This document shows positions 26,251 to 29,200 of a stretch of DNA of 64,000 nt, one piece after another. Source of the stretch: Macrostomum lignano. Lineage: Eukaryota. Numbering within the stretch: position 1 is the first letter of the stretch; the number at the start of each line of letters is the position of its first letter. Location of the stretch: the NCBI GenBank assembly GCA_002269645.1, contig NIVC01000136.1, forward strand, positions 62,001 through 126,000. Reading direction: 5' to 3'. Position numbers and translations under genes: made by a program. Below the pieces are notes generated by a model. The model was not told where the DNA came from. It saw only the letters and a list, made by a program, of their open reading frames with translations, and searched no databases.

Positions 26251-29200
26251 TCAGCCCAGCACAGAGGCGGTGACGGCCACGCCCCGCTCAAAGAACTGCG
26301 TAGCCGTGTTTGGCTCCTCAGTGGGGAAGGTGAGGGTGAACAGCAGCTGAGCCCGGGTGGAGTTCAGGTACACAGGCAGACTGACTGAGCTCTCAGGCGG
26401 CGGCTTCTTGTAGGCCTCGTGCCTCACCCAGCAGATCTCGGTGCGGGCCAGCTCGCTGCTGATGCTGTTCACCAGGCGGAGCTTGTTGTCGGCGCACTCG
26501 GCTCCCATGAGACGCAAGCCGTGCACCACGAAGGTGCTGGCATCGGGCGGCGGGCCGTCAGCAGCTGGACGGACCTTCACGTCCAAAGTGAGCTCCTCCA
26601 GGGCCCAGCGGTTGCTCTGGGCAACGGTCTGCCTGGTGGCGGTGATGTAGGCCTCGGGCATGAAGAGGCCGCCAAGCCACACGGGAGCCAAGCGAAGCGA
26701 CTCAATGCCGCCCTTGGCAACCAGATCTGAGATTCGAGCCATCTGCCGGACCCGCTCGGCAAAGTCGGCAACCCACTGGATGGCGGTGAGCCCAGCTGGC
26801 ACCGTGTACTTCTTCCAGCCAGCCGGTATGAGGCTCTTCTGCAGGTCCGCCATCATCTTGCGGTGATGATTTGTCGGCTTGCGCTCCGCCGCGCACACTG
26901 CCGCCACCTCGCTGAGATCTTTGCGCACCGCGGCAAGCAGGTTGGCAGCTGAGGTGACCTCGCGCTCGAAGCAGCGGAACAGCGGATCCTTGATGTTCTC
27001 GGCTGTGCGGGCCATGCGGCGCAGGTCCTTGGGCAGCTGGCCCAGCCAGTCATTGGCCTGGTTGCACAGCTGCCGCATCCAGGCCGGCCTGGCGTCACCC
27101 GCATTGCTGATAGTGCGCTGGCGACCGCTGACCACCAGGTCTTCGTCATCTTCAACGTGCTGCATCTGCATCACCTTGCCCAGCATCTCTTGGCCTGAGT
27201 TAAAAGGGGGAAAAAGAACACAAAACTGACATGGACTTTTGGTTTACTATTTTTGTTAGTAAAGTTTAAATTGGCGCAAAAATTTTTTTACCAGTAATTC
27301 AAATTCGCGCCAAAAATTACGCTGTCTGGATTTTTGTTTTACATTATAAAAAGGTGATAGCTATTCAGAGAGGAAAAAACACAAATCTTGATTTATTGAG
27401 TTTTAAATTTAAAACAATTTTTGTTAAACTACTTTAGAAACTTTTTGGCACGAATTCAAATTTTTGAAAAACATTGTTAAAACCAGAGGAAAAACTGCCT
27501 TCCAGTGTGTACATAGTATGTACTATCGCATTGATTTTTGACGAAAGAACTTGTACCGCACCTCAGAAGGAATATACGGAGAAAAAACAGCATTACCTAC
27601 CCTGAAACTCCTTAAGAACTACAGTACATAGGATCGTATAAATATGGTAATGAGAGAAAAAACCGCTTCACCAGTCGAACTCCACCTTGAGTTTTAATAT
27701 ATACAGGTGTTTTCATATTATCCTAAAGAGACTGTGAATAAGACAGGAATGCGTGACTGTACCGCCTTCATCTTTCTCGTCCTCCTCCAGCAGGTCAAGT
27801 TTCAGCAAGTCTTTCACAAGTCGAGCCGCTGTACAGAACAAAATTCAATTAGTGTAAGTGCGCATCTTGACAAAACTTAATTAAAATACAAAAAAGGCGC
27901 ATATTAAACAATAAAATGTGGCTGTCTCAGCGTACTGCAGGGCACACTGGAGTCGGTGATACGCAGAGCAGCATAGAAAAAGTCAGCCCAGCTTCCTCAG
28001 CTTCGTCTGCCACAGTTAGGGAACGCCTCAGACAGCTACTTAAGAAGCTGACTGGGAGCTGTCCGTGGACAAAGTCAAAGAGCTGATGATAGTAAAGAAA
28101 GAGATTTAAAAAATTTAAATTTGATTTCCAATACATATCGGCAGAATGAATAAATTGGAAAATAACAGCCAACCTACTGATTCTAGCGTTGGTGCAACTC
28201 AAATTAAAAGGCCTTGTCTGACTGCGTACTAACCGCTATTAGGTTGGCTTAACCTGCTTACAAAAACGATATGATACTTTTTTTGATATGATAATTAATA
28301 CTTTAATTTCAAGGGCACTGACATTAAGAAATCAGAGTGCATGTGGCTGTCTCAGCGTACTGCAGGGCGCACTGGGGTCTGTGATACGCAGAGCAGCATA
28401 GAAAAAGTCAGCCCAGCATCCTCAGCTTCATCTGCCACAGTTAGGGAACGCCTCAGGCAGCCAATTTAACAATACAGACTGGCTGGGAGCTGTCTGTGGA
28501 CGACATGGAATCTCATTAAATAGACTGGCTATTCACACTACTGCAGCTCAGTAGTATCTGAGACTCTGTGAGCGATCTGAGCCCCAGCCCCACTAGCTAC
28601 TCACACTACTGCAGCTCAGTAGTATCTGAGACTCTGTGAGCGATCTGAGCCCCAGCCCCACTAGCTACTCACACTACTGCAGCTCAGTAGTATCTGAGAC
28701 TCTGTGAGCGATCTGAGCCCCAGCCCCACTAGCTACTCACACTACTGCAGCTCAGTAGTATCTGAGACTCTGTGAGCGATCTGAGCCCCAGCCCCACTAG
28801 CTACTCACACTACTGCAGCTCAGTAGTATCTGAGACTCTGTGAGCGATCTGAGCCCCAGCCCCACTAGCTACCCACACTACTGCAGCTCAGTAGTATCTG
28901 AGACTCTGTGAGCGATCTGAGCCCCAGCCCCACTAGCTACTCACACTACTGCAGCTCAGTAGTATCTGAGACTGTAAGCGATCTGAGCCCCAGCCCCACT
29001 AGCTACTCACACTACTGCAGCTCAGTAGTATCTGAGACTGTGAGCGATTTGAGCCCCAGCCCCACTAGCTACTCACACTACTGCAGCTCAGTAGTATCTG
29101 AGACTCTGTGAGCCCCGCAGCGGACAGCCGCAGACACGCAGGCCGCGAGTCTCTGAGGCAAAAATGCCGCACAGGGCCGCCAACCGTCTGCCACAGAAGG

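What the first reader, a model, noticed from the sequence alone, without database searches (positions are those of the whole stretch)
27392..27828. Cryptic alternative last exon that would make a C-terminal-cap-less (yeast-like) dynein
Seen: in the last dynein intron there is a strong phase-1 acceptor at 27828. It opens [22 protein letters not shown], a paralogue of the first helix of the true last exon ([20 protein letters not shown]). Read-through ends at a stop at 27713, followed by ATTAAA (about 27693-27698) and AATAAA (27392-27397) on the minus strand. Established: fungal dyneins end shortly after this helix and lack most of the ~300-aa C-sequence/CT-cap, and removing the cap raises force and processivity of mammalian dynein. 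Inference: an animal gene that encodes both capped and uncapped motors. Alternative reading: an in-frame 66-nt cassette using G|gtacag at 27763.
Basis: partly seen in the sequence, partly recalled or inferred. Interest (0 to 1): 0.82.

Follow-up and report, generated by a model that had tools for sequence, protein, structure and literature searches.

The report
Spare H1-helix exon in dynein's last intron
The last intron of an animal's cytoplasmic dynein heavy-chain gene holds an old, still coding-like second copy of the short helix that starts the motor's C-terminal cap, followed by a stop codon and a poly(A) signal, so the gene may also make a yeast-like cap-less motor, but no RNA evidence could be obtained.

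Summary
The gene on the minus strand is a cytoplasmic dynein-1 heavy chain. Its last exon (27194-26251) is the Pfam Dynein_C domain. In the last intron, an AG at 27830-27829 opens, in the required phase 1, [22 protein letters not shown], then 16 more codons, TGA (27715-27713) and ATTAAA 15 nt later.

Scored against 72 orthologous H1 helices, this peptide ranks second of 54,337 six-frame 20-mers in the window (33.1). Only the true H1 is higher (41.5), and the third scores 18.0. Of 54 usable phase-1 AG sites in the intron, it is the only H1-like one.

The 66 nt form a GC island with exon-like codon usage; the tail looks like intron. The copy matches real orthologues at 9-10 of 22 residues but the constitutive helix at only 3 of 22 (27/66 nt). 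Neutral-decay simulations never reproduced this. That points to an old duplicate kept under protein-level constraint.

Against it: the acceptor is average to weak, not strong. The cassette donor is no better than a decoy. No transcript or close relative was available.

Best reading, about 40%: an alternative terminal exon giving an H1-retaining, cap-less dynein. Main rival: an unused pseudo-exon.

The parts
29422..29860 (-). Penultimate dynein exon (end of AAA6, ...[18 protein letters not shown]). Donor TGG|gtaaga after 29422, phase 1.
   Evidence: Spliced mapping against full-length dynein P0120 and the junction search; translation.
27195..29421 (-). Last intron, 2227 nt. Its position, after the G codon just before H1, is shared with distant animals.
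   Evidence: The same intron position occurs in metagenome loci L030, L033 and L043. Intron read-through tails start there in several database proteins, including one from a frog.
27916..29267 (.). Repeated element with a 68-nt tandem array (28524-29113), inserted in the intron. The candidate exon is not part of it.
   Evidence: Self-BLAST finds copies at about 15.5-16.2, 17.2, 18.6-19.1, 20.6-21.3, 24.6-25.5 and 31.1 kb, all ending at 27916. Arrays.
27829..27865 (-). 3' splice-site region of the candidate exon: a 35-nt AG-free zone, branch-point-like cactaat, tract ttttgttctgt, and AG at 27830-27829.
   Evidence: Pyrimidine fraction is 0.65, the median of real sites. Generic score 1.7 (8.3% of intronic decoy AGs are as good); gene-specific score -0.2 (23.7% of decoys).
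27763..27828 (-). H1-like coding segment, 66 nt, encoding (A)[21 protein letters not shown] in phase 1.
   Evidence: Profile rank 2 of 54,337 and unique among phase-1 AG sites. GC 0.53 against flanks of 0.28 and 0.33-0.38. Codon-usage log-likelihood +15.1 bits in frame, -10.8 and -24.1 in the other frames, top 0.01% of intronic windows.
27713..27762 (-). Read-through tail [16 protein letters not shown] and stop TGA (27715-27713). Its composition is intron-like.
   Evidence: Codon log-likelihood -17.9 and GC 0.40.
27650..27698 (-). Candidate poly(A) site: ATTAAA (27698-27693) 15 nt after the stop, followed by a GU/U-rich tract (ggtggagtt...ggttttttctctc).
   Evidence: There are only 6 AATAAA/ATTAAA hexamers in 11.45 kb of sense-strand introns of this gene. 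A random intronic position has one within 35 nt with probability 0.02.
27392..27397 (-). Second hexamer, AATAAA, 316 nt after the stop.
   Evidence: About 1.2 such hexamers are expected by composition in these 518 nt, so it carries little weight.
26251..27194 (-). Constitutive last exon: H1 ([20 protein letters not shown]), the hinge and the whole CT-cap, with the stop at 26253-26251.
   Evidence: Pfam Dynein_C PF18199, positions 6-308 of 309, E 2e-49. Human DYNC1H1 E 1e-209. Acceptor ...ccccttttaactcag|G has the best score in the gene.

Best explanation
The start of the last exon (its acceptor plus the 66 nt that encode helix H1 and the acidic patch) was duplicated long ago into the last intron. 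The upstream copy has been kept as protein-coding sequence.

The only way to translate it that fits the local signals is as an alternative, skipped-type terminal exon. The donor at 29422 is spliced to 27828. Translation runs through a second H1 helix and 16 unconstrained codons to TGA at 27715-27713. The transcript is cleaved after ATTAAA (27698-27693).

The product would be a dynein heavy chain with a complete AAA ring and H1 but without the hinge and the roughly 290-residue CT-cap. That is the natural equivalent of yeast dynein and of the engineered rat MD-deltaCT, which is more processive and produces more force.

Shown: the duplicate exists, it is H1-like, it is in phase, and it looks coding. 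Inferred: that it is spliced, polyadenylated and translated.
For: 1. H1-likeness in exact register with a phase-1 AG is unique in the intron and second only to the true H1 in the window.
2. The divergence pattern is star-like. The copy shares 9-10 of 22 residues with real orthologues but only 3 of 22 aa and 27 of 66 nt with the constitutive helix. The constitutive type (GQEM..MQH) is already shared with the closest relative found, P0119, at 60% identity. The split is therefore old.
3. Simulations of a neutrally decaying copy never gave, at any divergence from 0.15 to 1.0 substitutions per site and from three ancestors, an open frame, a profile score of at least 33.1, GC of at least 0.52 and identity to the other copy of at most 0.42 together (0 of 1000 in each of 18 conditions).
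4. Codon usage is +15.1 bits, which is in the range of the gene's real exons per 21 codons (9-21). The GC island stops where H1-likeness stops.
5. The stop is followed at 15 nt by one of only six poly(A) hexamers in 11.45 kb of this gene's introns, then by a GU/U-rich tract.
6. The same gene holds a clean pair of duplicated, mutually exclusive exons, so exon duplication has been put to use in it.
7. The truncation point matches a construct known to be an active motor (PMC4339881).
Against: - There is no transcript, protein or comparative evidence of any kind. The species and its near relatives are absent from every searchable collection.
- The acceptor is only average to weak.
- The argument for constraint rests on 22 codons and on a simple mutation model.
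- The tail is intron-like, and the hexamer evidence is modest (p about 0.02-0.08).
- AlphaFold2 gives only a low-confidence helix for the copy (pLDDT 52-58).
- No animal is known to make a cap-less dynein-1.
Confidence: 0.4

Rival explanations
1. Unused pseudo-exon. A partial tandem duplication of the start of the last exon is not, or is no longer, spliced into mRNA. It is seen on its way to decay, or it was lost from use only recently.
For: This is the default fate of partial exon duplicates. The acceptor is average to weak. H1-likeness, GC and codon bias all end abruptly after 66 nt, as a duplication breakpoint would. GC (0.53) lies between exon (0.64) and intron (0.33), as in partial decay. 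At 0.15-0.25 substitutions per site, a neutral copy of a consensus-like ancestor still keeps the score in 32-77% of runs and the open frame in 51-64%.
Against: Those small divergences predict 68-79% nucleotide identity to the constitutive copy, against 41% observed (P<0.001 in the simulations). Divergences that give 41% destroy the H1 score (P<=0.001). The copy resembles orthologues rather than its neighbour. No flanking intron similarity survives, so the event is old.
Confidence: 0.32
2. Poison exon. The acceptor at 27828 is used with a downstream donor (27562 GAG|gtgcgg or 27601 AGG|gtaggt). The included exon carries the TGA more than 50 nt before the last junction, so the mRNA is degraded. 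This would tune dynein dosage rather than make a protein.
For: Donor-like sites scoring 5.1-5.8 lie 228-267 nt downstream, within the range of the weaker real donors.
Against: It does not explain why the first 22 codons look like H1 and use exon-like codons. The ATTAAA lies before these donors.
Confidence: 0.08
3. In-frame 66-nt cassette (27828-27763) that inserts a second H1 helix in front of the constitutive one and lengthens the link to the cap.
For: The coding-like segment is exactly 66 nt and is bounded by AG and GT in compatible phases.
Against: The donor GCG|gtacag scores -3.6 against 9.3+-3.8 for real donors (generic score -2.5 against 1.2 to 8.5), and 42% of intronic decoy GTs do as well. 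The two other in-frame GTs are worse. The relative's sequence P0119 has a single H1.
Confidence: 0.05
4. Chance: an amphipathic, acidic open frame that happens to follow an AG.
For: The helix is short and low in complexity. With one sharp HMM the score is only 6.0 bits (E 2 per window). With human H1 alone, two unrelated windows score about as well.
Against: Rank 2 of 54,337 with a wide gap to the third (33.1 against 18.0), in exact register with the acceptor. It is the only one of 54 usable phase-1 sites in the intron. The same 66 nt carry a coincident GC island and exon-like codon bias.
Confidence: 0.02

Closest known systems
Engineered rat dynein MD-deltaCT (aa 1157-4348; Nicholas et al. 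2015, PMC4339881)
   Same: It ends just after helix H1 and lacks the hinge and the 32-kDa CT-cap. The predicted isoform keeps AAA6 and an H1 helix and stops 23 residues beyond the equivalent point.
   Different: The rat protein is a laboratory construct. Here the truncation would be encoded in the gene, with its own diverged H1 copy and a 16-residue unrelated tail. Nothing is known about expression.
Saccharomyces cerevisiae dynein (naturally short C-terminus)
   Same: A natural motor that keeps H1 and lacks the cap. The paper describes deltaCT as 'as in yeast'.
   Different: In yeast this is the only form. Here it would be an optional isoform beside a full Dynein_C exon. Yeast chains were too divergent to appear among the 60 PDB matches listed, so I did not check the alignment myself.
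Alternative (skipped) terminal exons with intronic polyadenylation that give C-terminally truncated proteins
   Same: An intronic acceptor, a short open frame, a stop, a hexamer and a GU-rich tract upstream of the normal last exon.
   Different: Such exons are usually unrelated sequence. This one is a duplicate of the beginning of the exon that it would replace.
Tandem exon duplication giving mutually exclusive exons (for example the Schistosoma mansoni DHC1 example in PMC3228551, and the pair at 37260-37065 / 36980-36785 in this gene)
   Same: It originates by duplication of an exon start together with its acceptor, and protein features are retained despite old divergence.
   Different: There is no usable donor and the partner is the terminal exon, so it cannot work as a classical mutually exclusive pair.

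Membership tests
Cytoplasmic dynein-1 heavy chain gene | Full-length collinear similarity to DYNC1H1, with AAA6 followed by the Dynein_C domain | tested here: met
   Human DYNC1H1 chains give E 1e-209 over residues 4025-4643; dynein-2 and axonemal chains give E 1e-45 or weaker. Collinear tblastn hits to a 4613-aa dynein run from 53.1 to 26.3 kb. PF18199 E 2e-49.
Helix H1 of the dynein C-sequence | Position directly after ...[15 protein letters not shown], with hydrophobic residues at helix positions 4, 5, 8, 9, 11 and 14, K at 10, then an acidic run | tested here: met
   [20 protein letters not shown] has L4 V5 L8 L9 K10 L11 L14 and EEDE at 15-18. Profile score 33.1 against 41.5 for the true H1.
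Helix H1 of the dynein C-sequence | Folds as a helix docked on the AAA ring | tested here: inconclusive
   The AlphaFold2 model of AAA6 plus the alternative end predicts a helix over residues 304-330, but pLDDT is 52-58 and overall pTM is 0.50.
Alternative terminal exon | Functional 3' splice site | tested here: inconclusive
   The site lies within the range of real sites on a generic score (1.7 against 2.0+-1.9; 8.3% of decoys as good). It is low on the gene-specific matrix (-0.2 against 6.2+-4.2; 23.7% of decoys). It has an AG-free zone and a branch-point-like ctaat.
Alternative terminal exon | In-frame stop followed by a poly(A) signal and a downstream U/GU-rich element | tested here: met
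   TGA at 27715-27713, ATTAAA at 27698-27693, then ggtggagtt...ggttttttctctc. This is met at the motif level only; p is about 0.02 for the hexamer position.
Alternative terminal exon | Transcripts with the 29422^27828 junction and a 3' end in the intron | not testable with these tools
   No sequence of this species or a near relative is in the protein, contig or metagenome collections.
Cassette exon | Usable 5' splice site in a compatible phase | tested here: not met
   GCG|gtacag scores -3.6 (real donors 9.3+-3.8), and 42% of decoy GTs are as good. The other in-frame GTs are worse.
Mutually exclusive exon pair | Two internal exons of the same length and phases, both with acceptor and donor, and homologous | tested here: not met
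   The copy has no donor and its partner is the 944-nt terminal exon. In contrast, the 196-nt pair at 37260-37065 / 36980-36785 meets every criterion.
Neutrally decaying duplication relic | Protein similarity, GC, open frame and nucleotide identity to the parent all consistent with one neutral divergence | tested here: not met
   0 of 1000 simulations in each of 18 conditions (three ancestors, d from 0.15 to 1.0). The result depends on the model and rests on 66 nt.

The most novel reading that the evidence does not exclude
One animal dynein-1 heavy-chain gene encodes tunable motors by splicing. An alternative terminal exon would swap the whole CT-cap for a bare second H1 helix, giving a yeast-like, high-force, more processive motor. 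A mutually exclusive 196-nt exon pair would swap the first half of the microtubule-binding domain. Both elements are parts of the motor thought to set force and run length.
Probability: 0.3. Interest if true: 0.85.

Novelty: new variant of a known kind. Interest (0 to 1): 0.62.

Why it matters
The CT-cap is the one large structural difference between weak, poorly processive mammalian dynein and strong, processive yeast dynein. Removing it from the rat motor converts the first behaviour toward the second (PMC4339881).

No organism is known to switch the cap on and off. A natural cap-less isoform in an animal would show that cells use the cap as a regulated brake. It would also give a ready-made pair of isoforms for single-molecule comparison.

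Even if the exon is not used today, its sequence suggests a long period of selection on a second H1 helix. That is a testable statement about dynein evolution.

Tried and rejected
1. Looking for the species or a close relative.
- A word-indexed protein search with the cassette-model junction gave at best 49% identity, and only short fragments were listed.
- An exact look-up of the last-exon ORF found nothing on record.
- An exhaustive search of representatives gave as best hit P0119, 60% identity, on a 2-kb JGI contig with no introns.
- A metagenome scan returned 58 loci, none close. Only L030, L033 and L043 have the intron, and it is short with no H1-like copy.

2. DNA-level similarity between the copy and the constitutive exon start with its flanks was not significant (local score 22 against 18.5+-2.7 for shuffles). 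In-register identity is 27/66. The best of 875 offsets falls one codon from the expected place.

3. The copy is not part of the neighbouring repeat. Every repeat copy ends at 27916.

4. Relics of other exons in other introns were sought by tblastn of each exon, and of the orthologue P0120, against the exon-masked gene. Only the microtubule-binding-domain duplicate turned up.

5. Rfam found nothing in the intron.

6. Pfam on the short peptides was uninformative. The true H1 peptide gives no hit either.

7. The first splice-site matrix used a wrong bound for one exon. It was redone, and the numbers quoted in this report come.

8. Internal acceptors in the last exon that could pair with the 66-nt copy were checked by eye on the sequence. 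None is in the right phase.

9. Yeast dynein chains were not among the 60 PDB matches listed. The yeast comparison therefore rests on PMC4339881.

Full report
WHAT IS THERE. The minus strand from about 53 kb to 26.25 kb carries a cytoplasmic dynein-1 heavy-chain gene. Its C-terminal 600 residues match human DYNC1H1 chains at E 1e-209, against 1e-45 or weaker for dynein-2 and axonemal dyneins. A 4613-residue choanoflagellate dynein maps collinearly onto 16 exon blocks. A neighbouring single-exon gene for MRG-binding protein has its best hits in a bivalve, a priapulid and vertebrates at 44-48% identity. The source is therefore an animal, but I could not name it.

The penultimate exon ends at 29422 in phase 1 (..LLRNL, G|gtaaga). 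The last exon runs from 27194 to the stop at 26253-26251. It covers positions 6-308 of the 309-position Pfam Dynein_C model. By the PDB alignment, the intron lies at human G4336, directly before helix H1. The same intron position is seen in three distant metagenome loci. It is also seen as intron read-through tails in several database proteins, including one from a frog.

CHECK OF THE OBSERVATION.
- AG at 27830-27829, with the exon starting at 27828.
- Phase-1 reading [38 protein letters not shown].
- TGA at 27715-27713.
- ATTAAA at 27698-27693 and AATAAA at 27397-27392.
- G|gtacag after 27763.

Of the 2227-nt intron, 27916-29267 is a repeated element with a 68-nt tandem array that has many copies elsewhere in the window. 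All copies end at 27916, so the candidate exon, 88 nt further on, is unique sequence.

IS THE H1 RESEMBLANCE REAL? I built a position-specific BLOSUM62 profile from 72 distinct orthologous H1 helices. I scored every stop-free 20-residue window in all six frames of the 64 kb. The true H1 scores 41.5, the candidate read in exact register from its acceptor scores 33.1 (z=7), and the third-best window scores 18.0.

Within the intron there are 178 AG sites, and 54 of them open at least 20 codons in phase 1. The candidate scores 33.1 and the next best 1.6.

Weaker references also rank it near the top. With human H1 alone it ranks 3rd of 54,337. A small profile HMM makes it the best hit in the window at 12.1 bits, and 3 of 200 shuffled windows reach that score. 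A sharper HMM gives only 6.0 bits. I take chance as excluded.

The orthologue set came from searches whose query contained the candidate peptide. The other roughly 220 conserved residues of the query dominate those searches, so I judge that bias to be negligible. The human-only test is free of it.

IS IT CODING-LIKE?
- The 66 nt have GC 0.53. Intron GC is 0.28 upstream and 0.33-0.38 downstream, and the last exon is 0.64.
- I compared codon frequencies from the 7-kb exon with intron trinucleotide frequencies. The 21 full codons score +15.1 bits in frame and -10.8 and -24.1 in the other frames.
- Real exons give 9-21 bits per 21 codons. Only 0.01% of intronic 63-nt windows reach +15.1.
- The 16-codon tail is intron-like at -17.9 bits.

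HOW OLD IS IT, AND IS IT DECAYING? The copy and the constitutive helix share only 3 of 22 residues and 27 of 66 nucleotides in register. No flanking similarity survives. Yet the copy shares 9-10 of 22 residues with real orthologues. The constitutive type (GQEM..MQH) is already present in the closest relative found, P0119, which is only 60% identical over the query region. This star-like pattern means that the duplication dates from a time when H1 was still consensus-like.

I simulated a neutral, AT-biased copy beside a constrained copy from three ancestors, at divergences from 0.15 to 1.0 substitutions per site:
- Keeping a profile score of at least 33.1 needs d of about 0.25 or less. That predicts about 70-80% identity between the copies.
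- Reaching 41% identity needs d of about 0.75 or more, where the score is lost.
- No run in any of the 18 conditions (0 of 1000 each) met all observed values together.

This is the main new argument that the copy has been under protein-level constraint. It rests on 22 codons and a simple model, so I treat it as suggestive and not as proof.

HOW COULD IT BE EXPRESSED?
- Acceptor. It has a 35-nt AG-free zone, a branch-point-like ctaat and a pyrimidine fraction of 0.65, the median of real sites. It is average on a generic score (1.7 against 2.0+-1.9; 8.3% of decoy AGs as good). It is low on a matrix built from this gene's 15 acceptors (-0.2 against 6.2+-4.2; 23.7% of decoys as good). 'Strong' is an overstatement.
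- Cassette donor. GCG|gtacag scores -3.6 against 9.3+-3.8 for real donors, which are nearly all CAG|gtgag. 42% of intronic GTs do as well, and the two other in-frame GTs are worse. I reject the cassette reading. No internal acceptor of the last exon is in a compatible phase either (read by eye).
- Terminal exon. The stop is followed at 15 nt by ATTAAA and then a GU/U-rich tract. The gene's sense-strand introns hold only six AATAAA/ATTAAA hexamers in 11.45 kb. A random intronic position has one within 35 nt with probability 0.02, or about 0.08 from local composition.
- Poison exon. Donor-like sites at 27562 and 27601 would allow one, but that would not explain the H1-like coding.

WHAT THE PRODUCT WOULD BE. 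The product would be a heavy chain with the full AAA ring and an H1 helix but without the hinge and cap. [quoted passage not shown] They found higher force and processivity (PMC4339881). The predicted isoform ends 23 residues beyond the equivalent point. An AlphaFold2 model of AAA6 plus the alternative end predicts a helix through the copy at low confidence (pLDDT 52-58, pTM 0.50). That result is compatible but not informative.

PRECEDENT IN THE SAME GENE. Residues 3253-3315 of the reference dynein, the start of the microtubule-binding domain, map to two adjacent exons at 37260-37065 and 36980-36785. Both are 196 nt, in the same phases and with good splice sites. They are 39% identical in protein and 52% in DNA. 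The length is not a multiple of three, so inclusion of both or neither shifts the frame. That is the signature of a mutually exclusive pair. A mutually exclusive exon in the Schistosoma mansoni dynein heavy chain has been described (PMC3228551). I could not tell whether it is the same one.

VERDICT.

My estimates are:
- about 0.40 for an alternative terminal exon giving a cap-less dynein
- 0.32 for an unused or lapsed pseudo-exon
- 0.08 for a poison exon
- 0.05 for a cassette
- 0.02 for chance

Junction reads, 3'-end reads and the same intron in congeners would settle it.

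Noticed in passing
window 37260-37065 and 36980-36785 (minus strand): Two adjacent homologous exons of 196 nt each, in the same phases and with good splice sites, encode alternative versions of the first half of the dynein microtubule-binding domain (..[19 protein letters not shown].. and ..[19 protein letters not shown]..). 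They are 39% identical in protein and 52% in DNA. This looks like a textbook mutually exclusive pair, and it would give two microtubule-binding variants of the motor.
   Followed up: partly
window 47355-40276 (minus strand): A single 7.08-kb exon of 2360 codons covers the dynein tail, linker and AAA1-AAA3. Nearly all introns in the window are phase 0 with CAG|gtgag donors. [quoted passage not shown]
   Followed up: no
window 27916-29267; also about 4320-4434, 15466-16228, 17201-17362, 18561-19077, 19542-19697, 20562-21342, 24551-25456 and 31130-31364: One repeated element family, about 160-nt modules plus a 66-68-nt tandem array, is scattered through introns and intergenic DNA at 80-98% identity. 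It is probably a non-autonomous transposon carrying a satellite.
   Followed up: partly
window 48079-48693 (plus strand), in the dynein intron between 48796 and 47355: An open frame with the end of an RNase H domain (PF00075, E 2e-6), followed by a cysteine-rich tail. It looks like a fragment of a retrotransposon pol.
   Followed up: partly
window 23822-24442 (minus strand): A single-exon gene for MRG/MORF4L-binding protein (Eaf7 domain, E 6e-10) lies just downstream of dynein. Its best hits are a bivalve, a priapulid and vertebrates at 44-48% identity, the only clue obtained to the kind of animal.
   Followed up: partly
window 31611-30902 (minus strand): I could not place the splice junction between these two dynein exon blocks with canonical sites. 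A 20-nt tandem array (30879-31018) overlaps the expected acceptor.
   Followed up: no
window 2369-3502, 6532-7109, 22122-23591, 32184-32596, 33596-34517, 35133-35579, 37464-37905, 57378-58238: There are many long minisatellite arrays with periods of 10-138 nt, several of them inside dynein introns. The 28-nt array at 22122-23591 has 53 copies at 94% identity.
   Followed up: no
loci L030 (about 7077-7224), L033 (5377-5705), L043 (1314-1663); proteins P0092, P0093, P0096, P0100, P0102-P0104: The intron just before helix H1, after the G codon of ..LLTTxG, is present in distant animals. Many database 'proteins' end with read-through of this intron, so it is an old, conserved intron position that marks the start of the Dynein_C domain.
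   Followed up: partly
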